Source of the DNA: Dendrobates tinctorius
Lineage: Eukaryota
Assembly: GCF_039654945.1 (NCBI RefSeq)
Contig: NW_027361784.1
Span: 42,470,001-42,534,000 of the forward strand
Reading direction: 5' to 3'
Length of the DNA: 64,000 nt
Positions 1 through 57,912 of the stretch are shown here, piece by piece. Below the pieces are notes generated by a model. It worked only from the letters and a program-made list of their open reading frames with translations, had not been told where the DNA came from and ran no database searches. The translations under genes and the position numbers were made by a program. The stretch's first letter is position 1; each line of letters opens with the position of its first letter.

Positions 1-3000
1 CGGCAATGTCTCCTGCTTTGTCTACATTCCCACTACTTGTAGTGGAAATGTGGACAGAGCAGGAGACATTGCCTGACTCACCTCTAGGGAGAAGCTGCTG
101 TTACAGAACCCCAGTAACACCGGAACAAGTGTGGGTTGTGCAGACGGCATTTCAGAGCAGCAACTGGCGTGGTTGGAAGCCAGAGGAAATACTCAAAACA
201 GAGTGAAGACAGAGGCCTAATTGGAGTACGTTGACAGTTAGTAGTAGTCTAGAAACAATCGCAAACTGCCACCAAGTAGGCCTCGGCCTACTACCTGATT
301 TTCTCTGGGCTCCGACACCGCCAGTTGGGCTCAGAAGTGCTGTCCGCACAGACAAAACACTCGCTCATGTGTAAGTGGGGTTCGGTAACGTCAGCTGATC
401 CCCTGCTGTGTGTATGGCAAAGTGTCCTGCTCCCTCCACAGTCAAACAACCTCAGATTTACACCTGGCTCCAAGTAGGCCTCGGCCTACTACCTGATTTT
501 CCCTGGGCTCCGACACCGTCGGTTGGTGCTCAGAAGTGCTGTGCGCACAGACAAAACACTCGCTCATGTGTAAGTGGGGTTCGGTAACGTCAGCTGATCC
601 CCTGCTGTGTGTACGGCAAACTCTCCTGCTGCCTACAACTTCTGACTACCTCTGATTTAATATGTTCTCTGATTTGCCCTCTGTCTCCACTCTGTTTTGA
701 GTATTTCCTCCGGCCTACAACACCGCCTGTTTCTGCTCTCAAGTGCCGTCTGCACAATCCACACTTGTTCCTGTGTTACCTGGGTCATGTAACATCTGCT
801 CATCTCCAGAGGTGAGCACGGCAATGTCTCCTGCTTTGTCTACATTCCCACTACTTGTAGTGGAAATGTGGACAGAGCAGGAGACATTGCCTGACTCACC
901 TCTAGGGAGAAGCTGCTGTTACAGAACCCCAGTAACACTGGAACAAGTGTGGGTTGTGCAGACGGCATTTCAGAGCAGCAACTGGCGTGGTTGGAAGCCA
1001 GAGGAAATACTCGAAACAGAGTGAAGACAGAGGCCTAATTGGAGTACGTTGACAGTTAGTAGTAGTCTAGAAACAATCGCAAACTGCCACCAAGTAGGCC
1101 TCGGCCTTCACCCTGATTTTCCCTGGGCTCCGACACCGCTAGTTGGGCTCAAAAGTGCTGTCCGCACAGAAAAACACACTTGTTCATGTGAAAGTGGGGG
1201 TCAGTAACGTCAGCTGATCCCCTGCTGTGTGGAGGGCAAACTGCTGCTGCCTCCAAATTCAAACAACGTCTGATCTTAAATTGCCTCCAAGCTGGCCTCA
1301 GCCTACAAAATGACTATCCCTGGGCTCCAACATCGTCAGTTGTTGCTCGGAAGTGCTGTCCACACAGAAAAACACACTTGTTCATGTGAAAGTGGGGGTC
1401 AGTAACGTCAGCTGATCCCCTGCTGTGTGGAGGGCAAACTGCTGCTGCCTCCAAATTCAAAATACCACAGCTTTACACCTGGCTCCTAGTAGGCCTCGGC
1501 CTGCACCCTGATTGTCCCTGGGCTCCAACAACGCTAGTTGGTGCTCGGAAGTGCTGTCCACACAGAAAAACACACTTGTTCATGTGAAAGTGGGGGTCAG
1601 TAACGTCAGCTGATCCCCTGCTGTGTGGAGGGCAAACTGCTGCTGCCTCCAAATTCAAAATACCACAGCTTTACACCTGGCTCCTAGTAGGCCTCGGTAT
1701 GCACCCTGATTGTCCCTTGGCTCCAACAACGCTATTTGGTGCTCGGAAGTGCTGTCCACTCAGAAAAACACACTTCTTCATGTGAAAGTGGGGGTCAGTA
1801 ACGTCAGCTGATCCCCTGCAGTGTGGAGGGCAAACTGCTGCTGCCTCCAAATTCAAAATACCACAGCTTTACACCTGGCTCCAAGTAGGCCTCGGCCTGC
1901 ACCCTGATTGTCCCTGGGCTCCAACAACGCTAGTTGGTGCTCGTAAGTGCTGTCCACACAGAAAAACACACTTGTTCATGTGAAAGTGGGGTTCGGTAAC
2001 GTCAGCTGATCCCCTGCTGTGTGGAGGGCAAACTGCTGCTGCCTCCAAATTCAAACAACGTCTGATCTTAAATTGCCTCCAAGTAGGCCTCAGCCTACAA
2101 AATGACTATCCCTGGGCTCCAACATCGTCAGTTGTTGCTCGGAAGTGCTGTCCACACAGAAAAAAACACTCGTTCATGTGAAAGTGGGGTTCGGTAACGT
2201 CAGCTGATCCCCTGCTGTGTGGAGGGCAAACTGCTGCTGCCTCCAAATTGTAACTACTTCAGATTTAAACATTCTCTGATTTGGCCTCTGCCTCCACTCT
2301 GTCTCTAGTATTTCCCCTGACCTCCAACACCGCCAGTTCCTGATCACAGTTGCCGTCCACGCATTCCACACGTGTTCCTGTGTTACTGGGGTTCTGTAAC
2401 GTCAGCAGATCCCCCAATATGTGTCCGCCACTGTCTCCTGCGCTGTCCACTTTCCCACTGCAAGCAGTGGGAACGTGGACAGAGCAGGAGACAGTGGCAG
2501 ACACACATCAGGGGATCTGCTGACATTACAGAACCCCAGTAACCCAGGAACACGTGTGGATTGGGCAGACGGCTGCTGTACGCATAAACTGGCGGTGTTG
2601 GTGGTCACGTGAAATCCTGGAAACAGAGTGGAGACAGATGCCTAATTGGAGCACGTTGACAGTCTGTTGTAGCCTACAAACAATCTAAAACTGCCACCAA
2701 GTAGGCCTCGGCCTACACCATAATTCTCCCTGGGCTCCAACAACGCTAGTTGGTGCTCGTAAGTGCTGTCCACACAGAAAAACACACTTGTTCATGTGAA
2801 AGTGGGGGTCGGTAACGTCAGCTGATCCCCTGCTGTGTGGAGGGCAAACTGCTGCTGCCTCCAAATTCAAACAACGTCTGATCTTAAATTGCCTCCAAGT
2901 AGGCCTCAGCCTACAAAATGACTGTCCCTGGGCTCCAATATCGTCAGTTGTTGCTCGGAAGTGCTGTCCACACAGAAAAAAACACTTGTTCATGTGAATG

Positions 3001-3735
3001 TGGGGGTCGGTAACGTCGGCTGATCCCCTGCTGTGTGTATGGCAAAGTGTCCTGCTCCCTCCAAAGTCAAAATACCTCAACTTTACACCTGGCTCCTAGT
3101 AGGCCTCGGCCTACACCATGATTGTAACTGGGCTCCAACAACACCAGTTGGTGCTCGGAAGTGCTGTCCACACAGAAAAACACACTCGTTCATGTGAAAG
3201 TGGGGTTCGGTAACGTCAGCTGATCCCCTGCTGTGTGGAGGGCAAACTGCTGCTGCCTCCAAATTGTAACTACTTCAGATTTAAACATTCTCTGATTTAC
3301 CCTCTGTCTCCACTCTGTCTCTAGTATTTCCCCTGACCTCCAACACCGCCAGTTCCTGCTCACAGTTGCCGTCCACGCATTCCACACGTGTTCCTTTGTT
3401 ACTGGGGTTCTGTAACGTCAGCAGATCCCCCAATATGTGTCCGTCACTGTCTCCTGCGCTGTCCACCTTTCCACTGCAAGCGGTGGGAATGTGGACAGAG
3501 CAGGAGACAGTGGCAGACACACATCAGGGGATCTGCTGACATTACAGAACCCCAGTAACCCAGGAACACATGTGGATTGGGCAGACGGCTGCTGTACGCA
3601 TAAACTGGCGGTGTTGGTGGTCACGTGAAATCCTGGAAACAGAGTGGAGACAGATGCCTAATTGGAGCACGTTGACAGTCTGTTGTAGCCTACAAACAAT
3701 CTAAAACTACCACCAAGTAGGCCTCGGCCTACACC
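1..3735 (+). repeat. Internal ~180-198-bp satellite units interleaved with hairpin modules (copy 1)
   Basis: Core GGGGT(T)C(A/G)GTAACGTCAGCTGATCCCCTGCTGTG recurs. 198-bp period at 1473/1671/1869; larger duplications with 818-bp (1 vs 819) and 1016-bp (2174 vs 3190) periods; inverted-repeat centres near 38, 856, 2462 and 3479. Confidence 0.9.
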
Positions 3736-5045
3736 ATGATTGTCCCTGGGCTCCAACAACGCCAGTTGGTGCTCGGCAGTGTCTTTGGCACGGGGACTCC
3801 CTGTTGCCCAGCCTGGTTCCAGCACGCCTGCTGTTTCCGGGTAGTGTCAAGGTCACTATGCCACCAATCCGTTGTCCTGTCATCTTGCGGCCGGGTTAGC
3901 CGACTCTACGGTGCCTGCAGTTTAGGTGTCTCCTATGTGGGCTGCGGGAACTGGCACTGAAGGCTGGATCCGTAGTGCCAATGGGACATGGACCCCCTGT
4001 AGGACTGTGGGTTTTGGTAACTGCGGCCGGCTTGCGGCCTGGCTACTTTGCTTTGAATGGGTACCTTCTGCTACCCACCCGGGTTCCAGCACTGTCTGCT
4101 GGTTCTCGCCAGAGCCTTTGGCCTAGGTGCCTCCATCTCGGTATCTGAAGTCCAGCACCGTCAGCTGGTCCTTGGTAGTGCTTTTTAGCACAGGTACCTT
4201 CTGCTTAGTAACCATGGTCCAGCACCGTCAGTTGGTCCTCGGTAGTGCCATTGGCTCTTGTAGCTTTTGCTACCCATCTGGGTTCCAGCACCGTCAGCTG
4301 CTTCTCGGCAGTGTCTTTGGCACGGGTACTCCCTGTTGCCCAGCCTGTTTTCAGCACGTCTGCTGTTTCCGGGTAGTGTCAAGGTCACTATGCCACCAAT
4401 CCGTTGTCCTGTCGTCTTGCGGCCGGGTTAGCCGACTCTACGGTGCCTGCAGTTTAGGTGACTCCTATGTGGGCTGTGGGAACTGGCACTGAAGGCTGGA
4501 TCTGTAGTGCCAATGGGACATGGACCCCCTGTAGGACTGTGGGTTTTGGTAACTGCGGCCGGCTTGCGGCCTGGCTACTTTGCTTTGAATGGGTACCTTC
4601 TGCTACCCATCCGGGTGCCAGCACTGTCTGCTGGTTCTCGCCACAGCCTTTGGCCTAGGTGCCTCCATCTCGGTATCCGAGGTCCAGCACCGTTAGCTGG
4701 TCCTTGGTAGTGCTTTTTAGCACAGGTACCTTCTGCTTAGTAACCGTGGTCCAGCACCGTCAGTTGGTCCTCGGTAGTGCCATTGGCTCTTGTTCCTTCT
4801 GCTACCCATCCGGGTGCCAGCACTGTCTGCTGGTTCTCGCCACAGCCTTTGGCCTAGGTGCCTCCATCTCGGTATCCGAGGTCCAGCACCGTCAGCTGGT
4901 CCTTGGTAGTGCTTTTTAGCACAGGTACCTTCTGCTTAGTAACCGTGGTCCAGCACCGTCAGTTGGTCCTCGGTAGTGCCATTGGCTCTTGTTCCTTCTG
5001 CTACCCATCCGGGTGCCAGCACTGTCTACTGGTTCTCGCCAGTTT
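3736..5045 (+). repeat. ~66-bp monomer higher-order array (532-bp and 199-bp periods) in copy 1
   Basis: Core TCCAGCACCGTCAG(C/T)TGGT every ~66 bp; 3926 vs 4458 = 532 bp; 4659 vs 4858 = 199 bp. Confidence 0.88.
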
Positions 5046-6004
5046 CTCAGCCTTCTTGTACCTTCTGCTACATTTCCAAGATCAAGCTTTTTGAAATTGT
5101 CTTTGGTAATCCTTATTGATCTCCATGACGACAACCCTGATGACGACGACCCTGAAAACCACACCAAAGAAGACCAGAAATATGACCCTAAATAATAAGA
5201 CCAAGAGGACAAAGAACATGAAGACAACCACCAAGATACAGAACAAAAGACAGAAGAACAAGAAGCAGAAGAAGCAAAAGCAGAAGAACAGAAAGCAGAA
5301 GAACATTAAGCATAAGACTAAAAATCAGCATAGAAGAAATCAAAATTATAAGCAGAAGAAGACTAAGCAGTAAATGGGGGTGAGTCCTTTCCTCCTCGTG
5401 GTGCCCCTGGAAAATGCCTGCTGCTGCAGGCCAAACTGAACGCGGACAAATCCTGTTGTAAATCTGTTGTGACAGGCAGAACGTAAGGTGTAATCTTATA
5501 ACTTTTATAGATAAGTACTACAGGAATGCCTGTCACCATAAGAAAATTAAGACAAAGAAGAATAGGAAGAAGATGAAGAAATAGCATATTAAAATTAATA
5601 ATAGCTGAATAAGAAGAATATGAAGAATGGAAAAAAAAATTAATGGGAAGAAGATGAAGAAGAAGAAGATGAATAAGGTGAAGAAAAAGTTGATGAAAAA
5701 AATGCAACTGCTGCGGATCATGAAGGAGAAAGTGTGGGAGAAGTACAAAAGAAGGTGAAGAGCATGGAAGTTGTGAAACATACAGTACATATCTGACAAA
5801 ATATATAAAAGGTTAACATAGTCAATATCTTTTTAACTCCGAACGTATTGAAAAAAAAAATTGGAATTAATGCTATGCCATGTGATTTGAATAAACCACT
5901 ATACTTTTAATGTCTCCTCCACCTCCCACAATACATTCTACATGATTCTTATTTGTTTTCAATTATGTAGAATTAGCCAACAAGGAAATAAAGGGCTTTT
6001 TTTA

Positions 6005-6140
6005 ATTCCGATACCGGAAGTCCCATTGACTTGAATGGGACTTCCGGTATCGGAATCGGCGATACCCGATATTTTTTTCGTATCGGGCGATACCATCCGA
6101 TACGATATTTTTGGGTATCGAACGGTATCGCTCAACACTA
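6005..6140 (+). repeat. 3' subterminal CCGATA/TATCGG motif cluster with a 23-bp-arm palindrome and TIR
   Basis: ATTCCGATACCGGAAGTCCCATT-gacttg-AATGGGACTTCCGGTATCGGAAT (6005-6056), followed by repeated CGATA/TATCG motifs up to the TIR. Such clusters are typical hAT transposase-binding subtermini. Confidence 0.8.
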
Positions 6141-21882: not shown

Positions 21883-22075
21883 CATGTGCTCAGAATGAAC
21901 CTGCACTTATCCTTGAAGAGTACAGGCTGCCAATGTCGAATCTGCCAATCTTGTTGTTGGGTGGAGGGATCACCACCCACTTGTGGACGTCGGGTCCTCA
22001 TATCACCCTCATGGAGTCTTTTTCTCACAGTTTGAGCATACCCATAGATGTTGTTGGCCTGCTAGAGGTCATGTT
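21883..22075 (-). mobile_element. Old Tc1 transposase fragment, left half of the element split by hAT copy 2
   Basis: Reverse complement aligns with ~57525-57620 of the related Tc1 fragment; continues at 35131. Confidence 0.75.
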
Positions 22076-22424
22076 TAGAGTTGAGCGATACCAGCCGATA
22101 CTTGAAAATATCGGATCGGAATGGATCGGCCGATCTTAAAAAAAAGTATCGGTATCGCCGATTCCGATACCGGGAACCAATGCAAGTCAATGGGGCCAAA
22201 ATATCGGAATTAAAAAAAACCTTTCTTTCCTTGTAGGTTAATTCTACATGAAGAAAAACAACTAAGAATAATGTAGAATGTATTGTGGGAGGTGGAGGAG
22301 ACATTAAAGCCATAGAGGTTTAGCCCAATCAAATGGAATAGCAGGAATTAAACTTTTTTTTTAAAGATGTTAGGAGTTACAAAGATATTGACTATGTTAG
22401 CCTCATTTATATTTTGCCAGACAT

Positions 22425-22775
22425 GTATGTCTTCTTCTTCTTTCTTCTTCTTTCTTATTCTTCTTCCTTTTTTTTACCTTCTTCTTCTTCTTCTTATTCC
22501 TTTTTTTACATTCTTCTTCTTCTTCTTCCTCCTTTTTTTACATTCTTCTACTTCCTTTTTTTACATTCTTCTTCTTCCTTTTTTTACATTCTTCTTCTTA
22601 TTCCTTTTTTTACATTCTTCTTCTTCTTCCTTTTTTAAATTCTTCTACTTCCTTTTTTTACATTCTTCTTCTTCTTCTTCCTTTTCTTACATTCTTCATA
22701 TTCTTCTTATTCAACAATTATTATTCTACATATTCAACTTCTTCATCTTCTTCCTATTCTTCTTCATCATATTCT
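22425..22775 (-). repeat. GAA/A-rich low-complexity tract (TTC/T-rich on +) in the hAT 3' region
   Basis: (CTT)n interspersed with TTTTTTTACATT units; counterpart at ~5540-5790. Confidence 0.85.
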
Positions 22776-23104
22776 TGTTTGTGTCAGGCATTCCTGTAGT
22801 TGTTATCTGGAAAAGTTAGAAGTTTACACCTTCCGTTCTGCCTGTCACAAAAGATTTACAACAGGATTTGTCCGCGTTCTGTTTGGCCTGCAGCAGCAGG
22901 CCTTTTCCAGGGGCACCACGAGGAGGAACGGACTCACCCCCATACACTGCTTAGTCTTCTTCTGCTTATAAATAAGATAATATCATTTGCTCAGAGTATT
23001 AGTCTTATGCTTAATGTTCTTCTGCTTTGTTTTTTTTATGCTTCTTGGTCTTCTCTCTCTTGTTGTTCTGCATCTTGGTGGTTGTCTTCCTGTTCTTTGT
23101 CCTC

Positions 23105-24160
23105 TTGAACCAGCTGAAGGAACTGGCACCGGGAGGGGCAGCAGAAGGAACAAGAGCCAATGGCACTACCGAGGACCAGCTGACGGTGCTGGAACCCGGT
23201 TACTAAGCAGGAGGTACCTGTGCTACAAAGCACTACCAAGGACCAGCAGACGTTGCCGGAACTCGGATACCGAGATGGAGGCACCTAGGCCAAAGGCTCT
23301 GACGAGAACCAGCTGACGGTGCTGGAACCCGGAGGGGTAGCATAAGCTGCAAGAGCAAATGGAAATAGCGAGGACCAGCTGACAGTGCTGGCACCCGGAG
23401 GGGCAGCAGAAGGAATAAGAGCCAATGGCACAACCAAGGACCAGCTGACGGTGCTGGAACCCGGTTACTAAGCAGGAGGTACCTGTGCTACAAAGCACTA
23501 CCAAGGACCAGCAGACGTTGCCGGAACTCGGATACCGAGATGGAGGCACCTAGGCCAAAGGCTCTGACGAGAACCAGCTGACGGTGCTGGAACCCGGAGG
23601 GGTAGCATAAGCTGCAAGAGCAAATGGAAATAGCGAGGACCAGCTGACAGTGCTGGCACCCGGAGGGGCAGCAGAAGGAATAAGAGCCAATGGCACAACC
23701 AAGGACCAGCTGACGGTGCTGGAACCCGGTTACTAAGCAGGAGGTACCTGTGCTACAAAGCACTACCAAGGACCAGCAGACGTTGTCGGAACTCGGATAC
23801 CGAGATGGAGGCACCTAGGCCAAAGGCTCTGCCGAGAACCAGCTGACGGTGCTGGAACCCGGAGGGGTAGCATAAGCTGCAAGAGCAAATGGAAATAGCG
23901 AGGACCAGCTGACAGTGCTGGCACCCGGAGGGGCAGCAGAAGGAATAAGAGCCAATGGCACAACCGAGGACCAGCTGACGGTGCTGGAACCCGGTTACTA
24001 AGCAGGAGGTACCTGTGCTACAAAGCACTACCAAGGACCAGCAGACGTTGCCGGAACTCGGATACCGAGATGGAGGCACCTAGGCCAAAGGCTCTGACGA
24101 GAACCAGCTGACGGTGCTGGAACACGGAGGGGTATCAGAAGTTACCCCTGAAAAGCAAAG
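23105..24160 (-). repeat. 265-bp higher-order repeat (4 x ~66-bp monomers), ~3.8 copies
   Basis: Near-identical blocks at 23223/23488/23753/24018; monomer core ACCAGCTGACGGTGCTGGAACCC. Confidence 0.93.
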
Positions 24161-24742
24161 TTGGCATGCCGCAAGCTGGCCGCAGTTACCGAATCACACA
24201 GTCCTACAGGGGGTGCTTGTCCTACTGGCACTATGGAACAAGCCTTTCTTACCAGAACCCGCAGTCCACATAGGAAGCACCTAAACTGCTGGCACCCTAG
24301 CCTCGGCTAACCCAACCGCAACACGACATGGCAACTTGGGGTGGCAAACTGACATTGACACTTCCCGGAAACAGCAGGCAGGGCTGGAACCAAGCTGGGC
24401 AGGAGGGAGTACCCGTGCCAAAGTCAGTTATGAGCAGCAACTGGCGATGTTGGAGCCCAGGACAAGCACTTAGCAGGCTGAGGCCTGATGTGCTGTCAAT
24501 TGGGAGGCAGCAGGACAGATTGCCATCAAAACAGCAGGGGAACAGCTGACGTTACTGAACCCCACAAACACAGGAGCTAGTGTTTTACTCTGTGAAGACG
24601 GCACTTCCGAGCAACAACTGGCTGTGTTGAAGCCCAGGGACAAGCACGGAGCAGGCTGAGGCTGCATTGAAGAAATTTTAAGATCGGTTGTAGACTACTA
24701 ATTTGAACCAAGCTCCACTTAGGCCTGTGGCTTCACTGATTT

Positions 24743-25049
24743 TCGTATTTCCCCTGTCCTCCAACCCCGCCAGTTACAGCTCCGAAGTGGCGTCTGCACA
24801 ATCCACACTTGTTCCTGTGTTACAGGTGTTCAGTCCGGTCAGTTAATCCCCTGATGTGTGTCCGGCAATGTCGCCTGCTCTGTCCACATTCCCATAATGG
24901 GAATGTGGACAGAGCAGGCGACATTGCCGGACACACATCAGGGGATTAACTGACCGGACTGAACACCTGTAACACAGGAACAAGTGTGGATTGTGCAGAC
25001 GCCACTTCGGAGCTGTAACTGGCGGGGTTGGAGGACAGGGGAAATACGA
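24743..25049. repeat. Perfect palindrome: 153-bp arms with a 1-nt spacer (centre 24896), imperfectly extending to ~24710-25080
   Basis: Left arm TCGTATTTCCCC...CACATTCCCAT, spacer A, right arm ATGGGAATGTG...GGGGAAATACGA; arms compared by eye and found to be exact reverse complements. Confidence 0.95.
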
Positions 25050-25109
25050 GAGACAGTGGAGCCACAGGCCTAATTGGAGCACGGTTAAAAATCAGTAGTG
25101 GTATGACTG

Positions 25110-27610
25110 TGTAGGCAGCAGGAGACTTTGCCATCTACACAGCAGGGGATCAGCTGACGTTACTGAACCCCACTGAGACACGGGAGCAAGTGTCTCTTTC
25201 CGTGTGGACGGCACTTCCGAACTACAACTGGCTGTGTTGAAGCCCAGGAAATAGGAGGGTGTAGGCAGAGGCCTACTGTATTTTGAATGAGGTGACAGCA
25301 GGAGAGACTGCCATCCACAAAGCAGGGGATCAGCTGAAGTTACTGAACCCCACTGAGACACGGGAGCAAGTGTCTCTTTCCGTGTGGACGGCACTTCCGA
25401 ACTACAACTGGCTGTGTTGAAGCCCAGGAAATAGGAGGGTGTAGGCAGAGGCCTACTGTATTTTGAATGAGGTGACAGCAGGAGAGACTGCCATCCACAA
25501 AGCAGGGGATCAGCTGACATTACTGAACCCCACTGAGACACGGGAGCAAGTGTCTCTTTCCGTGTGGACGGCACTTCCGAACTACAACTGGCTGTGTTGA
25601 AGCCCAGGAAATAGGAGGGTGTAGGCAGAGGCCTACTGTATTTTGAATGAGGTGACAGCAGGAGAGACTGCCATCCACACAGCAGGGGATCAGCTGACGT
25701 TACTGAACCCCACTGAGACACGGGAGCAAGTGTCTCTTTCCGTGTGGACGGCACTTCCGAACTACAACTGGCTGTGTTGAAGCCCAGGAAATAGGAGGGT
25801 GTAGGCAGACTGTATTTTGAATGAGGTGACAGCAGGAGAGACTGCCATCCACACAGCAGGGGATCAGCTGACGTTACTGAACCCCACTGAGACACGGGAG
25901 CAAGTGTCTCTTTCCGTGTGTACGGCACTTCCGAACTACAACTGGCTGTGTTGAAGCCCAGGAAATAGGAGGGTGTAGGCAGAGGCCTACTGTATTTTGA
26001 AAGAGGTGACAGCAGGAGAGACTGCCATCCACACAGCAGGGGATCAGCTGACGTTACTGAACCCCACTGAGACACGGGAGCAAGTGTCTCTTTCCGTGTG
26101 GACGGCACTTCCGAACTACAACTGGCTGTGTTGAAGCCCAGGAAATAGGAGGGTGTAGGCAGAGGCCTACTGTATTTTGAATGAGGTGACAGCAGGAGAG
26201 ACTGCCATCCACACAGCAGGGGATCAGCTGACGTTACTGAACCCCACTGAGACACGGGAGCAAGTGTCTCTTTCCGTGTGGACGGCACTTCCGAACTACA
26301 ACTGGCTGTGTTGAAGCCCAGGAAATAGGATGGTGTAGGCAGAGGCCTACTGTATTTTGAATGAGGTGACAGCAGGAGAGACTGCCATCCACACAGCAGG
26401 GGATCAGCTGACGTTACTGAACCCCACTGAGACACGGGAGCAAGTGTCTCTTTCCGTGTGGACGGCACTTCCGAACTACAACTGGCTGTGTTGAAGCCCA
26501 GGAAATAGGAGGGTGTAGGCAGAGGCCTACTGTATTTTGAATGAGGTGACAGCAGGAGAGACTGCATCCACACAGCAGGGGATCAGCTGACGTTACTGAA
26601 CCCCACTGAGACACGGGAGCAAGTGTCTCTTTCCGTGTGGACGGCACTTCCGAACTACAACTGGCTGTGTTGAAGCCCAGGAAATAGGAGGGTGTAGGCA
26701 GAGGACTACTGTATTTTGAATGAGGTGACAGCAGGAGAGACTGCCATCCACACAGCAGGGGATCAGCTGACGTTACTGAACCCCACTGAGACACGGGAGC
26801 AAGTGTCTCTTTCCGTGTGGACGGCACTTCCGAACTACAACTGGCTGTGTTGAAGCCCAGGAAATAGGAGGGTGTAGGCAGAGGCCTACTGTATTTTGAA
26901 TGAGGTGACAGCAGGAGAGACTGCCATCCACACAGCAGGGGATCAGCTGACGTTACTGAACCCCACTGAGACACGGGAGCAAGTGTCTCTTTCCGTGTGG
27001 ACGGCACTTCCGAACTACAACTGGCTGTGTTGAAGCCCAGGAAATAGGAGGGTGTAGGCAGAGGCCTACTGTATTTTGAAAGAGGTGACAGCAGGAGAGA
27101 CTGCCATCCACACAGCAGGGGATCAGCTGACGTTACTGAACCCCACTGAGACACGGGAGCAAGTGTCTCTTTCCGTGTGGACGGCACTTCCGAACTACAA
27201 CTGGCTGTGTTGAAGCCCAGGAAATAGGAGGGTGTAGGCAGAGGCCTACTGTATTTTGAATGAGGTGACAGCAGGAGAGACTGCCATCCACACAGCAGGG
27301 GATCAGCTGACGTTACTGAACCCCACTGAGACACGGGAGCAAGTGTCTCTTTCCGTGTGGACGGCACTTCCGAGCTACAACTGGCTGTGTTGAAGCCCAG
27401 GAAATAGGAGGGTGTAGGCAGAGGCCTACTGTATTTTGAATGAGGTGACAGCAGGAGAGACTGCCATCCACACAGCAGGGGATCAGCTGACGTTACTGAA
27501 CCCCACTGAGACACGGGAGCAAGTGTCTCTTTCCGTGTGGACGGCACTTCCGAGCTACAACTGGCTGTGTTGAAGCCCAGGAAATAGGAGGGTGTAGGCA
27601 GAGGCCTACT
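25110..27610 (-). repeat. 180-bp satellite array A (14 units)
   Basis: AGCAGGGGATCAGCTGA every 180 bp from ~25141 to ~27474; one 174-bp and one 179-bp unit. Confidence 0.97.
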
Positions 27611-29566
27611 GTCTTTGTAGTGCGGAGACAGCAGGAGAGACTGCCATCTCCACAGCAGGGGAACAGCTGGCAGTGCTGAACCCCACTAACACTTGAACGA
27701 ATGTGTTTGGCTCTGTGGAGACGACACTTCTGAACACCAACTGACGCTGTTGGAGCCCAGGATTAGGCGAGGAGCAGGCTGGGGCCTACTGGATTTTGGC
27801 AGGTGAATGCAGCAGGAGACTTGCCATCTCCACAGCAGGGGAACAGCTGACAGTGCTGAACCCCACTAACACTTGAACGAATGTGTTTGGCTCTGTGGAG
27901 ACGACACTTCTGAACACCAACTGACGCTGTTGGAGCCCAGGATTAGGCGAGGAGCAGGCTGGGGCCTACTGGATTTTGGCAGGTGAAGGCAGCAGGAGAC
28001 TTGCCATCTCCACAGCAGGGGAACAGCTGACAGTGCTGAACCCCACTAACACTTGAAAGAATGTGTTTGGCTCTGTGGAGACGACACTTCTGAACACCAA
28101 CTGACGCTGTTGGAGCCCAGGATTAGGCGAGGAGCAGGCTGGGGCCTACTGGATTTTGGCAGGTGAAGGCAGCAGGAGACTTGCCATCTCCACAGCAGGG
28201 GATCAGCTGACAGTGCTGAACCCCACTAACACTTGAACGAATGTGTTTGGCTCTGTGGAGACGACACTTCTGAACACCAACTGACGCTGTTGGAGCCCAG
28301 GATTAGGCGAGGAGCAGGCTGGGGCCTACTGGATTTTGGCAGGTGAATGCAGCAGGAGACTTGCCATCTCCACAGCAGGGGAACAGCTGACAGTGCTGAA
28401 CCCCACTAACACTTGAACGAATGTGTTTGGCTCTGTGGAGACGACACTTCTGAACAGAAACTGACGCTGTTGGAGCCCAGGATTAGGCGAGGAGCAGGCT
28501 GGGGCCTACTGGATTTTGGCAGGTGAAGGCAGCAGGAGACTTGCCATCTCCACAGCAGGGGAACAGCTGACAGTGCTGAACCCCACTAACACTTGAACGA
28601 ATGTGTTTGGCTCTGTGGAGACGACACTTCTGAACACCAACTGACGCTGTTGGAGCCCAGGATTAGGCGAGGAGCAGGCTGGGGCCTACTGGATTTTGGC
28701 AGGTGAAGGCAGCAGGAGACTTGCCATCTCCACAGCAGGGGATCAGCTGACAGTGCTGAACCCCACTAACACTTGAACGAATGTGTTTGGCTCTGTGGAG
28801 ACGACACTTCTGAACACCAACTGACGCTGTTGGAGCCCAGGATTAGGCGAGGAGCAGGCTGGGGCCTACTGGATTTTGGCAGGTGAATGCAGCAGGAGAC
28901 TTGCCATCTCCACAGCAGGGGAACAGCTGACAGTGCTGAACCCCACTAACACTTGAACGAATGTGTTTGGCTCTGTGGAGACGACACTTCTGAACACCAA
29001 CTGACGCTGTTGGAGCCCAGGATTAGGCGAGGAGCAGGCTGGGGTCTACTGGATTTTGGCAGGTGAAGGCAGCAGGAGACTTGCCATCTCCACAGCAGGG
29101 GAACAGCTGACAGTGCTGAACCCCACTAACACTTGAACGAATGTGTTTGGCTCTGTGGAGACGACACTTCTGAACACCAACTGACGCTGTTGGAGCCCAG
29201 GATTAGGCGAGGAGCAGGCTGGGGCCTACTGGATTTTGGCAGGTGAAGGCAGCAGGAGACTTGCCATCTCCACAGCAGGGGAACAGCTGACAGTGCTGAA
29301 CCCCACTAACACTTGAACGAATGTGTTTGGCTCTGTGGAGACGACACTTCTGAACACCAACTGACGCTGTTGGAGCCCAGGATTAGGCGAGGAGCAGGCT
29401 GGGGCCTACTGGATTTTGGCAGGTGAAGGCAGCAGGAGACTTGCCATCTCCACAGCAGGGGAACAGCTGGCAGTGCTGAACCCCACTAACACTTGAACGA
29501 ATGTGTTTGGCTCTGTGGAGACGACACTTCTGAACACCAACTGACGCTGTTGGAGCCCAGGATTAC
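27611..29566 (-). repeat. 180-bp satellite array B (~11 units) with a 540-bp higher-order pattern
   Basis: Units start at 27653+180n. Variant GGTGAATGC at ~27802/28342/28882 and GATCAGCTGA at 28201/28741 recur every 540 bp. Confidence 0.97.
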
Positions 29567-29635
29567 GCATGCCGCATGCAGAGGCCAATGGGCATCGGTT
29601 TTTATGGAGGTTGTGGACTACTACTGATTCTAACC

Positions 29636-30012
29636 ATGCTCCACTTAGGCCTCTGGCTCCACTGTCTCTACTATTTACCCTGGCCTCCAACCCCGCCAGC
29701 TACATCTCTGAAGTGGCGTCAGCACAATCTACACTTGTTCCTGTGTTACTGGTGCTCAGTCCCATCAGTTGATCCCCTGATGTTTGTCCGGCAAGTTCGC
29801 CAGCTCTGTCCTCATTCCCACTACTGGTTATGGGAATGTGGACAGAGCAGGAGACCTTGCCGGACACACATCAGGGGATAAACTGATGGGACTGAGCCAC
29901 AGGAACACAGGAACAAGTGTAGATTGTGCTGACGCCACTTCAGAGATGTAGATGGCGGGGTTGGAGGTCAGGGGAAATAGTAGAGACAGTGGAGCCAGAG
30001 ACCTAAGTTGGG
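29636..30012. repeat. Imperfect ~185-bp-arm inverted repeat, homologous to the 24.9-kb palindrome
   Basis: CTTAGGCCTCTGGCTCCACTG...CATTCCCA-ctactggtta-TGGGAATG...CAGTGGAGCCAGAGACCTAAG. Confidence 0.88.
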
Positions 30013-30246
30013 CACGGTTAAAAATCAGTAGTGGTTTGAATGTTGATGGAGCTGGTGACTCTGCCGTCCACACAGCAGGGGATCAGCTGGCATTACTGAA
30101 CCCCAGTAACACAGGAGCTAGTGTGTTTCTCTGTGCAGACGACACATCTGAGCGACAACTGGCTGTGTTGAAGCACAGGGATTATAGTTCAGGTGGTAGA
30201 AAAATGAACACACCAGCAGACCTGGATACAGTTGCCAACCACTAAT

Positions 30247-33200
30247 TTAGTCTGTAAGAGGAATGGCAAAGTCTTTGGAGATCCAGGCCTTGTTCATTTT
30301 CAGAAAAGTCAGCCGGTCAACATTATCGGAAGATAGTCGCGTGCGACGGTCTGTTAGTACACCACCTGCGGCACTAAAGACACGTTCCGATAATACACTG
30401 GCAGCAGGGCAAGCCAGCACCTCCAATGCATACTGGCTAAGCTCTGGCCATGTATCCAGCTTAGAGACCCAAAACTTGAAGGGGGAAGAGCCATCTGGGA
30501 GTACAGCGACAGGGCAAGACATGTAGTCTGACACCATCTGACGGAAGCGTTGCCTCCTGCTGACTCGAGGCGTCGCTGATGGTGTAGACAATTGTGGTGG
30601 ACACACAAAACTTTGGCACATTTGGGCCATAGTGGTCTTGCCTTGTGCTGCGGCACTGCCTCTGCTCCCTCTTTGTGCAGAGTTTCCTCCACTGCCTCGA
30701 CGCACAGAGCTGCTTTGTAAAGCACTAGCAACAATGCTGTCGGGTGGAATGGAAAACATTATGGACTGCACCAGTGACTCTTCGTACTCCCGCATTTTAC
30801 GCTCCCGGTTCAACGTTGGTATGAGCCTTTGTACGCTGTCCCGGTAGCGAGGATCTAGGAGGGTGTACACCCAATAATCAGCCGAGACGAGAATGTGGGC
30901 GATGCGGCGGTCGTTTCTCAGGCACTGCAGCATGAAATCAACCATGTGCTGCAGACTCCCAACTGCCAAAGAACCGCTGTCCCCTGTTTGAGGCGTGACC
31001 TCGACCTGCTCTGCATCACCCCACCCTCGCTGTACATACTGAGTAGAGGTTTGTGTACCTCCCTCCTCTGGAGAGATGTCTTCCTCCTCCATCGACTCCT
31101 CCTCATCCTCCTCACAAAGTGTCCCCTGCCTAGGCCTTTGTGAGGAAACACGTAGCGCAGACTGTCCAGAAGCAGATGGCATTTGGGACTCCTCATCCTC
31201 CACCTCTTCTGAAACCTCATCCCTTAGTGCTTGCAGTGTTTGTTGAAGCAGGCAGATAAGGGGGACAGTCATGCTGACTAGTGCATCATCTGCACTCGCC
31301 ATCCGCGTGGATTCATCGAAGGCACGCAAAACGAGGCAGATGTCCTTCATAGAGGCCCACTCAATGGTGCTGAAGTGTGAACGGCGCACAGTGCGACTTG
31401 TTTGCGCCTGATGCAGCTGGTACTCCATGACTGCTGCCTGCTGCTCACACAACCGCTCCAACATATGTAACGTTGAATTCCACCGGGTGGGTAGGTCACA
31501 TATGATGCGATGTTCCGGAAGGCCAAATCGTCGCTGCAGAGCAGCGAGGCGCGATCTTGCCGTGCTGGAACGTCACAAGTGAGCGCACTCTATGCGGACC
31601 TTGTGTAACAGTGCATCAAGATCCGGATAGTCCCTCAGAAAGCTCTGCACGACCAAGTTAAGAACATGTGCCAGACATGGGATGTGTGTGAGGTTGCCTA
31701 GGCCAAGAGCTGCCACCAGATTTCGGCCATTGTCACACACTACCAAGCCCGGCTGGAGATTCGCTGGCCCAAACCACACATCGCTCTCCAGCTTGATAGC
31801 ATTCCAGAGCTCCTGCGCTGTGTGGCTTCGATTCCCCAAAGAAATTAATTTGAGTACAGCCTGTTGACGTTTGGCCACGGCTGTGCTCATATCGGTCGTA
31901 ACAGGCTCCTGCTCTGCTGTTTCTGAGGAACTTGAGTAGGAGGAGGAGTCTATGTGTACAGACTGGAGTCCTGCAATCCGTGGCGTTGGAAGAACACGTA
32001 CAGCGCCACTCTCCAGATCCGTACCCGGCTCCACAACATTGACCCAGTGGGCAGTGAGGGAAAGGTATCGTCCCTGTCCATGGTTACTGGTCCACGCATC
32101 GGTGGTCAGGTGGACCTTGCTACTAACGGCGTTTAGTAGCGCATGTTTTATTTTGCCCTCAACATGTTTCTGCAGGGCAGGGACGGCTCGCCTGCTGAAA
32201 TAAAAGCGGCTGGGCACGTTGTATTGGGGGACTGCCAATGCCATTAAGTCCCGGAAGGTGTCAGTGTCCACCAGCCTGAATGACAGCATTTCAACTGCCA
32301 GAAGTTTGGCAATGCCAGCATTCAGAGACTGTGCTTGGGGATGGTTTGCCGAGTAAGGGCGCCTTTTATCCCATGCCTGTGCTACCGATGGCTGTGATGG
32401 ATGGGAACGTGCTGTTATGGGTGGAATCTGACAGGGTCTCCGGACAACAGTGGCAGAGGTTCTTCCTTGGCGATCCTGTGAGGAAGCCGAACCAGCAGTG
32501 TGTGAGCTGGAGGAAGAGGGCCCAACACGAACTGAAGGGGTGGTAGGTGGTGCTGTACGTTGGCCTACGTCTTCAGGGTGTCTCTGCAACTCCAACTCGT
32601 GCTTGGTGCGCACATGTTTCCACATATTTGTGGTATTGAGGTTGCTGACATTTCTCCCTCTTTTGACTCTCTGATGACACAGCTTGCATTTGACAAAGCA
32701 AATGTCATCTGCAACTGTGTCAAAAAAGGACCACGCACTGCAACTCTTGTGAGCGCCCGGTTTGCCTTTGGAAGGAGGAATGCTCCTAACGGGTGCCGAA
32801 GTGGAGGGTACAGGCAACCAAGTCTTCCCCCTCCCTCTGCCTCCTGTTTTGGCCGGTAGGGGAATCTCTTCCTCAGAGCTGCTACCACCACCTTCCTGTT
32901 GCTCACGCCATGATGGGTCAAGGACCTCATCATCTTCCCTCCCCTCTTCAAACAGCTGCTTCTCCGGTGTTGTCTCGCCAGCACCGTACGCACCAGAAAG
33001 TGGCAACTGAGTCTCGTCATCATCTGATGCGTACTGAGGTGTGCTGACCATAGGCACTGGCCCACTCGCCTCTTCAGATTCAGAGGGACAAAGAAGTTGC
33101 GCATCACTGCATACTCCCTCTTCTTCACATTCAGGAATGCTGCTTGGCTGGCCCCCTCTTTCCAAGCCAACAGATTCCGAGAACAGAAGTAGAGACTGTG

Positions 33201-33588
33201 ATGGCTCCTGTCCATGTCTCTCTGACTGCCTGGGCACTTTGGCAGGTGGTGAAGAGACAGATGGTTGCTCTTCGGTGCTCTGACCCTGAGAGGATGCGGA
33301 AGTAATTGAAGTCGATGCGTTAGCTGCCATCCATCCGACAACGGCTTCAATTTGTTCCTCCCGCAGCAGTGGGGTACGTTGAGGTCCTACAAAGCTGCGC
33401 ATAAAGGACTGTTGCCTGCTAAAACTGGGGGATGCTGATCCACTGGTGCCCGCAGCAGGCCCAGAATCCCCACGTCCTCTACCTGTAGAATCCCCACGTC
33501 CTCTCCCTGCAGAATCCCCACGTCCTCTCCCTGCTGAAACTCCACGCCCACGCCCACGCCCCCGCGCCTTACTCCCTGCCTTCTTCAT
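30247..33588 (-). pseudogene. hAT (Ac-like, ZBED-type) transposase, ~1,113 aa, one premature stop (CGA>TGA at 31575-31573)
   Basis: RG-rich N-terminus; BED finger (AWSFF..CKLC..MWKHVRTKH); catalytic D (LTTDAWTS), D (VCDNGRN) and E (SERVFS); CLAH; TRWNS; hATC C-terminus. ORFs 33624-31573 and 31464-30247 share one frame; probable start MKKAGSK at 33588. Confidence 0.95.
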
Positions 33589-33949
33589 CTTGCAAGACTG
33601 CTTAAGATAGGCAAAAAAGTACAAAGGGGGGCCTTAGTGTGCTTATTCCTGAACAGCTGGTTACAGGTACAAGAAACACTAATTTTATGAAGTGTGTGTG
33701 TGTGGACTAGACTTTAATAGGAGCTGATGTGGCCTACACAAGTTCAAAATGTAGTGTTTGGTGAACTTTTTATGTGGTTTCTTTGTTTGAAACAAACTCA
33801 AAGTATGAGAACAAAGAATTGAAACTGATAGTATCACCAACTTTTTGGAGCTATTACAATGCAGGCAGGTAACCTACAATGCAAAAGATGAGGCTCCCAA
33901 AAAATTGGGTAATACTAATCTGGCTGCGCCGGCAGGGCACAAGCCAGAA

Positions 33950-34700
33950 AAAAAGGCTCCTCTATCTACTCCTATATAGTGTTTGCAACCAACCAATGTT
34001 GATGGATACGGATGGATGCACACTAATAGGAGAAGAAAAAATGAGCTGCACTCAAAGACAAATATGTGTGAGGCAGTGACGCACGTTGAGCGTCCTACAA
34101 CCAGACGTAGCTGCAGGACACTCTACTCAGCGTGAGCTGCACTCACACACAGTCAGAGACCTCTCAGACAGCCGTCAACAGTGCAGCTAAGTGGGCACTG
34201 GCACTGACAGGCTGCAGAAAGGCTCCGCTGTGTACTCCTATATAGTGTTTGCAACCACCGTAGATGGAGACGGATGGATGCACACTAATAGAAGAAAAAA
34301 TGAGCTGCACTCAAATAAAAATATGTGTGAGGCAGTGACGCACGCTGAGCGTCCTACAGCCAGACGTAGCTGCAGGACACACTACTCAGCGTGAGCTGCA
34401 CTCACACACAGTCAGAGACCTCTCAGACAGCCGTGAACAGTGCAGCAAAGTGGACACTAGCACTGAAAGGCTGCAGAAAGGCTCTGCTGTCTACTACTAG
34501 TGTTTGCAACCAACGTATATGGATACGGATGGAAGCACACTAGATTGAAATTATTTAAAAAATGCAGCTCAAAAAATAAAAGATGTATGAGGCAGCAGTG
34601 ATCACACTGGGTGGCCTACAGCCTGACGTGGCTGCAGGACCCACTCCACAGCGTGAGCTGCACTCACACAGCCCTTGCAGACAGCTGTGAACACTGCTGC
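33950..34700 (-). repeat. ~260-bp direct repeats x3 upstream of the transposase
   Basis: GAGCTGCACTCACACA and GGATGCACACTAATAG blocks recur at ~260-bp spacing. Confidence 0.85.
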
Positions 34701-34837
34701 TAGGGCAAAGAACTCTACAGTGGTGGTTTATGTAGCCTGGGTAAAGCACTAGATGTTTGGTGGAATCGCTATTTCTAACTGTCCCTCACAGTCTTCTACA
34801 GCAGCCTGTCCCTAACTGAATTCACAGCAGAGTGACC

Positions 34838-34970
34838 AGAAATGGCGGCTGCGGTGGCTTTTATAGTGCATCATGACATCATTTCGGCAGCCAATCACAG
34901 CCATGCCAATAGTTAACATGCCTACATGCCTAACAGGATGTGCCCACACTTCGGAGGATTCCCATTGGCT
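34838..34970 (-). promoter_or_regulatory. Putative Pol II promoter of the transposase (CCAAT, CRE-like TGATGTCA, TATAAAA, YY1-like GCCGCCATTT)
   Basis: Reverse complement of 57913-58045; TATA at 34865-34859. Confidence 0.55.
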
Positions 34971-35130
34971 TAATCAAAGCAAGCAGGCTCATAGCATGAT
35001 GGGAACTTCCTATTCCGATTCCGATCCCGGAATCCGATATGAAAAAATTATCGGAATTAAGTATCGGAATTCCGATACCGCTAATATCGGCCGATACCCG
35101 ATACTTGCGGTATCGGAATGCTCAACACTA

Positions 35131-35671
35131 GTCATGTTACAGGGCTCTGACTTCTCCTCCTATTCCTCCTTGCACAAAGGAGTAAGTAGTGGCCCTGCTG
35201 CTGGGTTGTTGCACTCCTTCGGATTACTCCACATCTCCTGGTATCTTCTGCATGCTCTGGACACTGCTCAAAGACACAGCTACCTTTCTTGTCACAGCTC
35301 TCATTTATATTCCATCCTGGATGAGCTGCACAACCTGAACAACTTCTGTGGGTCGTAGACACCACCTCATGCTACTATACAGAACATTTAGGGGTGAGAG
35401 CAAAGACAAAATGTAAAAGTGACCAAACAACAGCCAAAAAGTATGATAACAGAAAAATGGTCTGTGGTCACCCACTGCAGAACTACTCCTTTATAGGGCA
35501 TGTCATGTTAATTGTTGATCATTTCTACCTGCTGTCTGTTCCATTTTTACAACAACAGGATAAATTGATTCCGTGTTTTGTCATAACTCGACAAGTTGAT
35601 TTCACAAAAGCGTGATTGATTTGGTGTTACATTGTGTTGCTTAAGTGTTCCCTTTATTTTTTTGAGCAGTG
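35131..35671 (-). mobile_element. Old Tc1 element 5' half with TIR (right half of the element split by hAT copy 2)
   Basis: Ends AAGTGTTCCCTTTATTTTTTTGAGCAGTG|TA; homologous to 56969-57530. Confidence 0.8.
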
Positions 35672-57620: not shown

Positions 57621-57912
57621 CTCCCTCCGTCCACAAGCTCCAGTGATGAGCAGGTCCCTGACATCACAATGTCATGTGATGAGCCACCTGAGTCACTAAC
57701 CAGGCTTACAGTGAAGCAAGTTGTAAGGGGAGGACAGGACTGTAGTCGTGACTAGTGTTGAGCATTCCGATACCGCAAGTATCGGGTATCGGCCGATATT
57801 AGCGGTATCGGAATTCCGATACTTAGTTCCGATACTTTTGTCATATCGGATTCCGGAATCAGAATCGGAATCGGAAGTTCCCATCATGCTATGAGCCTGC
57901 TTGCTTTGATTA

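What the first reader, a model, noticed from the sequence alone, without database searches (positions are those of the whole stretch)
22076..35130. 13-kb hAT transposon carrying ~8 kb of ordered satellite/palindrome cargo
Seen: exact 8-bp TSD, TIRs and a transposase, followed by a fixed module order. That order is hairpin, 180-bp array B, 180-bp array A, perfect palindrome, 66-bp higher-order array, GAA tract, conserved island, GAA tract, subterminal repeats. The diverged copy 1 keeps similar module types in its 3' part with different periods. Known: model autonomous hATs (Ac, hobo, Tol2, Hermes) are ~3-5 kb. Inference: this family mobilises nucleosome-sized satellite arrays as an integral part and may seed satellite or heterochromatin blocks genome-wide.
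Basis: partly seen in the sequence, partly recalled or inferred. Interest (0 to 1): 0.8.

Follow-up and report, generated by a model that had tools for sequence, protein, structure and literature searches.

The report
Frog hAT transposon carrying satellite arrays
This is a real 13-kb cut-and-paste (hAT) jumping gene of a poison-frog genome, two-thirds of it inherited tandem-repeat arrays; it is a clean, unusually large example of transposons carrying satellite DNA, which is already known, not a new kind of element.

Summary
Window 22076-35130 is one hAT insertion with an exact 8-bp duplication, YARNG-type inverted ends, and a diverged second copy of the host repeat that shows the uninterrupted target. 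The transposase reads on the minus strand. It has 1,114 codons, BED and hAT-dimerisation domains, and a single CGA>TGA stop.

Downstream lie 8.2 kb of ordered modules. They are a partial unit, a palindrome, array B (11 units), array A (14 units), a second palindrome, a 66/265-bp higher-order array, GAA tracts and the 3' end.

A 98.7% copy (57753-64000) and a diverged subfamily copy (1-6140) keep the same order, so the arrays belong to the family and are not local expansions. Array B still homogenises within each copy.

New here:
- All arrays and both palindromes derive from one unit family built on a stem-loop core.
- The units keep a fold that is stronger on the sense strand.
- The 1.28 kb before the start codon, including the 259-bp array, holds no ATG.

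Seeding of satellites or heterochromatin is untested. In this window the unit occurs only inside the three hAT copies. The scan has already found similar array-bearing hATs on other DNA of this genome. Published frog elements (FEDoR, miDNA4) show the same principle. Verdict: new variant of a known kind, moderate interest.

The parts
22068..22075 (.). Target-site duplication, left copy (GTCATGTT).
   Evidence: The paralogous empty site holds the 8-mer once.
22076..22429 (-). 3' terminal inverted repeat (TAGAGTTGAGC) and the 3' subterminal region with ATCGG/CCGAT motifs.
   Evidence: It is 81.8% identical to copy 1 at 6140-5782.
22430..22776 (-). GAA-rich tract with a 23-26-bp period.
22777..23108 (-). 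Conserved non-repetitive island (about 22778-22960) followed by a second A/G-rich tract.
   Evidence: The stretch 22682-23107 is 85.6% identical to copy 1 at 5637-5202.
23109..24141 (-). Higher-order array: 3.9 copies of 265 bp, each made of four 66-bp subunits that carry the stem-loop core.
   Evidence: There are weak covariance-model hits.
24142..24701 (-). Spacer conserved with copy 1, followed by about 1.3 degenerate 180-bp units (24431-24662).
   Evidence: The unit core at 24519-24604 scores 75.7 bits.
24702..25090 (.). Palindrome 1: a head-to-head dimer of a third unit type (P). The inner 152-bp stem is perfect.
25116..27609 (-). Array A: 14 units of 180 bp, 96-100% alike.
27610..29562 (-). 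Array B: 11 unit cores, starting with a hybrid junction unit. The units are 98-100% alike and 78% like type A.
29628..30023 (.).
   Evidence: It is 99.5% identical to copy 3.
30034..30184 (-). Single partial unit lying between the stop codon and the hairpin.
   Evidence: The core at 30060-30145 scores 89 bits.
30247..33591 (-). hAT transposase gene of 1,114 codons, with N-terminal RG repeats (the 24-bp x3.5 array), a BED finger and the hAT dimerisation domain. It is broken by one TGA at 31573-31575.
33592..34870 (-). ATG-free leader of 1,279 nt, which includes the 259-bp x2.7 array (33952-34670).
   Evidence: The count is 0 ATG against 17-20 expected, with 27 CAT in the same stretch. Copy 3 also has 0.
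34871..35130 (-). 5' subterminal region with ATCGG/CCGAT motifs and the 5' terminal inverted repeat (TAGTGTTGAGC).
35131..35138 (.). Target-site duplication, right copy (GTCATGTT).
57753..64000 (+). Copy 3: the 5' part of a second element, 98.66% identical over 6,254 bp, running off the window. Its ORF is broken by a different stop, TAG at codon 801.
1..6140 (+). Copy 1: the 3' part of a diverged subfamily copy. It has 198-bp units, three complete palindromes and part of a fourth, a 66/199-bp higher-order array, GAA tracts and the 3' terminus.
57020..57619 (-). Paralogous empty site: another copy of the host repeat into which copy 2 inserted.

Best explanation
This is a young, just-inactivated copy of an autonomous-type hAT DNA transposon family of dendrobatid frogs. 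Its catalytic core looks ZBED1/ZBED4-like (Ac-type).

Shown
- The element moved as a 13-kb unit by cut-and-paste, making an 8-bp duplication.
- Only a quarter of it codes for the transposase.
- The 8.2 kb after the stop codon are tandem arrays and two palindromes. All of them descend from one ancestral unit built on a stem-loop, and they are inherited from copy to copy in a fixed order.

Inferred
- Unit numbers change and units homogenise within each copy, probably by unequal exchange and gene conversion.
- The 5' array is part of a long leader of the transposase message that lacks start codons.
- The 3' arrays are most likely carried along as tolerated, self-expanding non-coding DNA, probably transcribed with the gene. 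The sense-strand fold they keep hints at some constraint.
- Three copies within 64 kb fit the local hopping typical of hAT elements.
For: Insertion and family
- BED and hAT-dimerisation domains match.
- An alignment to Hermes covers the PTRWNST and SERxFS motifs.
- The nearest proteins are Ranitomeya 'ZBED4-like' at 72% identity and a 1,135-aa relative at 45%. Atlas neighbours are ZBED1/4-type RNase-H-like cores.

Recent activity
- Copies 2 and 3 are 98.66% identical with the same module junctions.
- Each has a different single nonsense codon, and the ORF differences are 8 synonymous to 20 non-synonymous. This means an intact ancestor followed by neutral decay.

Arrays
- Array B differs between the two copies by four differences shared by most units, while units within a copy are 98-100% alike.
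- Copy 1 keeps the module order at 72-89% identity.
- Palindrome arms are full-length diverged units, and the 66-bp units share the core.

Fold and leader
- The dyads are 89.6% paired, against 35-44% when the partners are slid.
- The sense strand folds at z -6.5, -4.9 and -4.8, against -2.8, -2.9 and -1.5 for the antisense strand.
- G.T pairs occur at 9 pair sites and A.C at 2.
- The leader has 0 ATG against 17-20 expected, in both copies.

Distribution: the unit core is found only inside the hAT copies of the window.
Against: - Both complete ORFs seen here are broken, so no active copy is demonstrated.
- Only one copy is complete end to end in the window. Array A and palindrome 1 are seen in one young copy only.
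- Transcription is not shown. The runs that cover the ORF, the leader and array B are only guessed to be RNA and are kept as contigs.
- Covariation in the unit fold rests on three or four lineages. It weakens when the palindrome arms are added: 7 pairs with two-sided changes, against 7-8 in the slid controls.
- A more distant relative (45% aa, L001) shows no array in the 280 bp after its stop, so the arrays are not a feature of the wider transposase clade.
Confidence: 0.82

Rival explanations
1. The arrays are functional modules and not passengers. Each unit would fold, on the sense transcript, into a hairpin, an extended hairpin and a three-way junction. The 190-nt-arm palindromes would give long double-stranded RNA. 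Together they would act on the transposon's own RNA, through stability, localisation, or small-RNA production that regulates the family.
For: - The same fold is predicted independently for three unit types that are 72-78% alike, and it is much stronger on the sense strand.
- Compensatory changes occur in the outer stem and in helix 4.
- G.T pairs occur at 9 pair sites and A.C at 2.
- The 27-nt stem-loop is 92% paired across all unit types, palindrome arms included.
- In the two runs guessed to be RNA, the hairpin bins 29500-29899 have zero depth, while the array B bin just before them and the bins from 29900 onward are covered.
Against: - There are few independent lineages, and the structure was derived from the same sequences.
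- The covariation measures are not above the slid controls once the palindrome arms are included.
- There is no Rfam match.
- The library type of the runs is a guess, and palindromes can also simply fail to assemble.
- Dyad-rich satellite units are common, and dyads may merely favour slippage.
Confidence: 0.15
2. The array block (24431-30184) was originally a separate non-autonomous, foldback- or FEDoR-like element, bounded by inverted dimers, that nested into the 3' untranslated part of an ancestral hAT. Ever since it would have been carried as part of a composite.
For: - The block has the scheme inverted pair - array - inverted pair, as published for FEDoR in Rana temporaria.
- It starts only 63 bp after the stop codon.
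- A 45% aa relative shows no array in the 280 bp after its stop.
Against: - No duplication or terminal repeats delimit the block. Unit-like sequence continues outside both palindromes.
- The 66-bp array further downstream shares the same core. This fits in-situ growth from one seed better than a discrete insertion.
- Copy 1 has three or four palindromes interspersed in the array, not two at the edges.
Confidence: 0.15
3. The arrays are post-insertion expansions at each locus, so the transposon does not mobilise them.
For: Units within an array are 98-100% alike, and array B differs between copies at four positions in most of its units. This shows turnover after the copies separated.
Against: Independent insertions with different target sites carry the same modules at the same junctions. 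These are copy 3 at 98.7% and copy 1 at 72-89%.
Confidence: 0.04
4. One reading: the family seeds long satellite or heterochromatin blocks across the genome.
For: - The family is highly repeated. About 30,000 contigs of a DNA run lie on 6 kb of it. One exact 130-nt contig has word depth 15,190, against 7.3 for a contig of the flank. This comparison is rough.
- Three copies within 64 kb supply adjacent homologous arrays.
- Seeding of this kind from transposons is documented in other taxa (PMC9659126).
Against: - No unit lies outside a hAT copy in this window.
- Contig depths cannot be read as copy numbers.
- The genome paper for the species named by earlier notes does not mention satellites or tandem repeats at all.
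Confidence: 0.15

Closest known systems
Model autonomous hAT elements (Ac, hobo, Hermes, Tol2)
   Same: - It has an 8-bp target duplication and short inverted ends of the form T-A-G-N-G.
- It has subterminal short repeats.
- Its transposase carries a BED finger, the W and E motifs shared with Hermes, and the C-terminal dimerisation domain.
   Different: - It is 13 kb long, against about 2.7-4.7 kb for the model elements (sizes recalled, not tested here).
- The transposase has 1,114 codons, including a 290-aa N-terminal extension with RG repeats.
- 63% of the element is tandem arrays and palindromes downstream of the gene.
- It has a 1.28-kb leader without ATG.
[quoted passage not shown]
   Same: - It is a dispersed frog DNA element with target duplications.
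- Its internal tandem arrays keep a fixed order.
- The scheme inverted pair - array - inverted pair is the same.
   Different: - FEDoR is about 3.5 kb, has no ORF, has 22-bp-type monomers, and is not assigned to a superfamily.
- The element here carries its own hAT transposase gene, has 180-bp units, and has palindromes made of the units themselves.
- No sequence comparison was possible.
Satellite-carrying non-autonomous DNA transposons: miDNA4 and Xstir MITEs of Xenopus, Helentron/DINE central repeats, Tetris foldback (review PMC9659126)
   Same: Tandem repeats lie inside the mobile unit, are spread by transposition, and expand locally.
   Different: According to the review, non-autonomous elements prevail as sources. 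Here the arrays sit in an autonomous-type element next to a nearly intact gene, and they are kilobases long.
Other array-bearing hAT elements noted by this scan on other DNA of the same genome (s1-382824, s1-362235, s1-382791, s1-376861)
   Same: - They are hAT ends and duplications enclosing homogeneous arrays.
- One note reports a start-codon-free upstream array.
- One note reports a 27-nt stem-loop core shared by several arrays.
   Different: Those elements are on other pieces of the genome and could not be aligned here, so whether they are the same family is unknown. In those notes the transposase lies between two arrays. Here most arrays lie downstream, with two palindromes.
Xenopus laevis '1723 element' (Kay and Dawid 1983; recalled from memory, not found in the paper library)
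   Same: As I recall it, a 6-10-kb dispersed frog element with short inverted ends, an 8-bp duplication, and a variable number of internal tandem units of about 185-204 bp.
   Different: This is unverified. No sequence or text was available, so it is only a lead.

Membership tests
hAT superfamily of DNA transposons | 8-bp target-site duplication | tested here: met
   GTCATGTT stands on both sides. The paralogous empty site holds a single copy.
hAT superfamily of DNA transposons | Short terminal inverted repeats beginning with the YARNG-type motif | tested here: met
   The ends read TAGAGTTGAGC and TAGTGTTGAGC, matching in 10 of 11 positions. All four termini in the window share the motif. The YARNG consensus itself is recalled, not tested.
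hAT superfamily of DNA transposons | Transposase with a BED zinc finger and the C-terminal hAT dimerisation domain | tested here: met
   PF02892 matches at 4e-8 and PF05699 at 1e-14 in copy 2, and both match again in copy 3.
hAT superfamily of DNA transposons | RNase-H-like catalytic core with the conserved W and E motifs | tested here: met
   The alignment to Hermes covers PTRWNST and SERxFS. Candidate D motifs (TTDAWTS, VCDNG) and CxxH (CLAH) can be read, but they were assigned from recalled consensus. Relatives and Atlas neighbours carry ZBED1-type RNase-like domains.
hAT superfamily of DNA transposons | Autonomy: an uninterrupted transposase reading frame | tested here: not met
   Copy 2 has TGA at codon 673 and copy 3 has TAG at codon 801. 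The frame common to both is open, so the family is autonomous in type, but these two copies are dead.
Transposon-borne satellite arrays (MITE, Helentron, FEDoR type) | Arrays lie inside the mobile unit and recur in independent insertions | tested here: met
Transposon-borne satellite arrays (MITE, Helentron, FEDoR type) | The same units also form free arrays outside the element (satellite seeding) | tested here: inconclusive
   None is found in this 64-kb window with BLAST or the covariance model. A genome-wide test is not possible with these tools.
Foldback elements | Long terminal inverted repeats built of tandem repeats that form the element's ends | tested here: not met
   The ends are short hAT inverted repeats. 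The long palindromes are internal.
Known structured RNA families (Rfam, including hammerhead ribozymes of amphibian satellites) | Match of the unit to a curated covariance model | tested here: not met
   No hit at gathering score in the whole window, and none at E<=1 in 26800-28200.
Catalogued repeat family (Dfam or Repbase) | An existing consensus with this structure | not testable with these tools
   Neither library is on hand. The genome paper of the species named by earlier notes reports hAT at 3.91% of the assembly and does not mention satellites or tandem repeats.

The most novel reading that the evidence does not exclude
The 3' arrays are selected RNA modules and not passengers. About 25 copies of a unit with a conserved three-way-junction fold, bracketed by two precursors of 190-bp double-stranded RNA, would be transcribed with the transposase message. 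They would control the family's own expression or silencing. This would be a transposon carrying a built-in structured-RNA and hairpin-RNA regulatory array.
Probability: 0.12. Interest if true: 0.75.

Novelty: new variant of a known kind. Interest (0 to 1): 0.42.

Why it matters
Large frog genomes are full of unclassified repeats. The genome paper of the species named by earlier notes left 39% of the assembly unassigned.

Elements like this one show that part of the apparent 'satellite' DNA may be internal cargo of hAT transposons, annotated piecemeal. That would change how repeat libraries for amphibians should be built.

The element also offers a clean system for two questions:
- How do tandem arrays and perfect palindromes arise, homogenise and survive inside a mobile element?
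- How much non-coding cargo can a cut-and-paste transposon carry?

The ATG-free leader and the strand-biased fold of the units are testable hints that part of the repeat load is functional. This adds an example to what is known, not a new principle.

Tried and rejected
- Papers on the Xenopus '1723 element': nothing in the library, so it stays a memory lead.
- Rfam on the whole window and on the units: no family. The idea that the three-way junction is a hammerhead was dropped.
- DNA around the Ranitomeya relatives, to see whether their elements carry arrays: no DNA was served for P0001, P0004 or P0006. Only a 4.4-kb contig of a 45% relative was readable, and it is too short to judge.
- Read depth to compare unit and gene copy numbers: all runs are kept as contigs, so depth cannot be used that way. 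No splice joint was seen in the gene.
- Poly(A) signals: no AATAAA or ATTAAA on the sense strand after the stop. Only about one was expected in the GC-rich arrays, so this says little.
- Covariation with the palindrome arms added: not above the slid controls. I therefore call the fold suggestive only.
- Segmental duplication as the source of copies 2 and 3: rejected. The flanks are only 73-77% alike, the paralogue is uninterrupted at the copy 2 site, and the bases next to the copy 3 terminus differ.
- The search of earlier findings by sequence and by a long word list: blank.

Full report
What is there

The window is GC-poor (36-46%) except for three GC-rich blocks at 1-4000, 24000-34000 and 60000-64000. 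These blocks coincide with tandem arrays. The finding's interval, 22076-35130, is bounded by the exact 8-mer GTCATGTT at 22068-22075 and 35131-35138. It ends in TAGAGTTGAGC on the left and, reverse-complemented, TAGTGTTGAGC on the right. With one mismatch allowed, that 11-mer occurs four times in the window (6140, 22076, 35130, 57753). All four are ends of three copies of the family.

The flanks of the element belong to an unrelated repeat. Another copy of that repeat lies at 57020-57619, 73-77% alike and inverted. There the left and right flanks are contiguous, and the alignment needs an 8-column gap exactly where the second copy of the 8-mer stands.

The gene

On the minus strand an open frame starts at 33591 (MKKAG...) and ends at 30247. 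It has 1,114 codons and one in-frame TGA at 31573-31575.
- The piece before the stop has a BED zinc finger and the piece after it has the hAT dimerisation domain.
- The second piece aligns to the Hermes transposase over PTRWNST and SERxFS, the motifs that hold the conserved tryptophan and the catalytic glutamate.
- The first piece aligns to the ZBED2 BED finger.
- The nearest proteins are a 'ZBED4-like' protein of Ranitomeya variabilis (72% identity) and a 1,135-aa protein with all three hAT domains at 45%.
- Atlas neighbours of the core are ZBED1/ZBED4/RICESLEEPER-type RNase-H-like proteins.

This places the element in the hAT superfamily, probably on the Ac side. That last step rests on recalled classification. 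Earlier scan notes name the genome as the dyeing poison frog. My own evidence agrees only with a dendrobatid frog.

Two more copies

The stretch 28877-35130 matches 64000-57753 at 98.66% over 6,254 bp, so a second, inverted copy runs off the window. Identity by module is given below.

| Module | Identity |
|---|---|
| ORF | 99.2% |
| hairpin | 99.5% |
| 259-bp repeats | 99.2% |
| other non-coding parts | 98.0-98.5% |
| array B | 96.9% |

Copy 3 has CGA where copy 2 has TGA. Copy 2 has GAG where copy 3 has TAG, at codon 801. Each copy therefore carries its own single nonsense change and their ancestor was open. The other ORF differences are 8 synonymous and 18 missense, as expected for neutral decay. 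The bases next to the copy 3 terminus differ from the copy 2 duplication, so these are separate insertions.

A third copy at 1-6140 is 72-89% alike and shows only its 3' part.

The cargo

Read on the element's own (minus) strand, the order after the stop codon is as follows.
- A partial unit at 30184-30034.
- A palindrome at 30023-29628.
- Array B, with 11 unit cores.
- Array A, with 14 unit cores.
- A second palindrome at 25090-24702.
- About 1.3 degenerate units.
- A conserved spacer.
- A 265-bp higher-order array of 66-bp subunits at 24141-23109.
- An A/G-rich tract, a conserved island, and a GAA tract.
- The 3' subterminal region.

A and B units are each 96-100% alike within the array and 78% alike between arrays.

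Each palindrome arm aligns over about 170 nt to a unit at 75-78%. The first arm is in array orientation and the second is inverted. The palindromes are therefore head-to-head dimers of a third unit type. Palindrome 1 folds with a perfect 152-bp inner stem and a 3-nt loop. Overall it is 96% complementary, and the hairpin is 91%.

The 66-bp subunits share a stem-loop core with two places of the 180-bp unit. The whole 7 kb from 23109 to 30184 thus derives from one ancestral unit built on a stem-loop.

Copy 1 has the same parts with other numbers:
- 198-bp units in runs of 2, 6 and 3.
- Three complete palindromes (80-84% complementary) and part of a fourth.
- A 199-bp higher-order array of three 66-bp subunits.
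- GAA tracts around the same island, then the terminus.

The module set and order are therefore older than the split of the two subfamilies, while unit numbers are fluid. Array B of copies 2 and 3 differs by four changes shared by most units of each copy. This is the signature of homogenisation within each copy after they separated.

Signs of constraint in the non-coding parts

(a) The leader. The 1,279 nt between 34870 and the start codon hold no ATG on the sense strand. The expectation is 17-20, and none of 2,000 first-order simulations gave fewer than 7. The same stretch holds 27 CAT. Copy 3 also has no ATG there. This stretch includes the 259-bp x2.7 array. It is best read as a long leader kept free of upstream start codons.

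(b) The unit fold. Units of types A, B and copy 1 align throughout and keep five dyads:
- a terminal hairpin;
- an extended hairpin;
- a three-way junction made of a 9-13-bp outer stem enclosing a 7-bp hairpin and the 27-nt stem-loop.

On that alignment 89.6% of cells pair, against 35-44% with slid partners. Seven pairs change on both sides, three of them in the outer stem. G.T pairs occur at nine pair positions and A.C at two. RNA folding predicts the same architecture for all three types. The z-scores are -6.5, -4.9 and -4.8 on the sense strand, against -2.8, -2.9 and -1.5 on the other strand.

There are cautions. The lineages are few and the structure was read from these sequences. With the palindrome arms added, pairing falls to 75.5% and two-sided changes no longer exceed the slid controls. 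No Rfam family matches. I rate the fold as suggestive of strand-specific constraint, not shown.

Reads

All public runs that hold the stretch are kept as contigs.
- A DNA run lays about 30,000 contigs on 6 kb. One exact 130-nt contig has word depth 15,190, against 7.3 for a contig of the flank. This points to a family of roughly thousands of copies, but such depths are not copy numbers.
- Two runs guessed to be RNA give near-identical contigs of 200-830 nt over the gene, the leader and array B, without splice joints. They give none on the hairpin bins 29500-29899. This is compatible with transcription but does not show it.
- A second organism holds the gene at about 90% identity.

No spliced model was used.

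Where the units are

BLAST of the element against the window finds the units only inside the three hAT copies. So does a covariance model of the 86-nt junction core searched without filters: every hit with E below 0.01 lies there, and the few hits outside have E above 0.1.

Comparison with what is known

Transposons that carry and spread tandem repeats are well documented. The review PMC9659126 stresses that non-autonomous elements prevail. In frogs, miDNA4 and Xstir MITEs of Xenopus are cited there.

FEDoR of Rana temporaria is a 3.5-kb dispersed element without an ORF. It has target duplications, four ordered internal arrays, and the scheme inverted pair - arrays - inverted pair. Its authors expected an autonomous partner to be found. 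The element here has that scheme next to its own transposase gene. No sequence link to FEDoR could be tested.

The genome paper for the dyeing poison frog reports hAT at 3.91% of the assembly and 39% unclassified repeats, and does not mention satellites or tandem repeats. The scan has several earlier notes of array-bearing hATs on other DNA of this genome, so this is not a one-off.

Verdict

The reading 'arrays are an integral, mobilised part of the family' is supported. 'Seeds satellites or heterochromatin genome-wide' is untested. It is a new, array-laden variant within a known superfamily and a known phenomenon, of moderate interest.

Noticed in passing
window 6140-7550: A 32-bp satellite (43 copies, 88% matches) begins at the very base after the 3' terminus of copy 1. 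Either copy 1 inserted into this array, or the array belongs to another element. No hAT end is seen at its far side.
   Followed up: partly
window 47907-49029: A 401-bp x2.8 tandem repeat that another first-stage note calls a hammerhead retrozyme. Rfam gives no hammerhead match, neither at gathering score nor at E<=1.
   Followed up: partly
window 55577-56452 (minus strand): A 291-aa ORF with Sleeping Beauty-type HTH, Tc3 HTH and DDE_3 domains. It is a Tc1/mariner transposase fragment lying between the hAT copies.
   Followed up: partly
window 21982-22075 with 35131-35624, and 57020-57619: These are two copies, 73-77% alike, of an unidentified host repeat. One was hit by hAT copy 2. The other ends 134 bp from the terminus of copy 3.
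   Followed up: partly
window 33462-33546: The 24-bp x3.5 tandem repeat is coding. It gives the GRGRGDSA repeats at the N-terminus of the transposase. A 6-bp indel between copies 2 and 3 lies just 5' of it at 33557-33562.
   Followed up: partly
window 41722-42159, 44061-44295, 16482-17158: Further short tandem arrays (68-bp x6.5, 61-bp x3.8, 77-bp and 63-bp repeats) lie in the DNA between the hAT copies. They were not examined.
   Followed up: no
L001 (ENA ERZ6864144 contig, 4,372 bp): It holds an intact 1,135-aa hAT transposase, 45% identical to the one here, on a short contig of an assembly whose organism is not stated. No array lies within 280 bp of its stop.
   Followed up: partly
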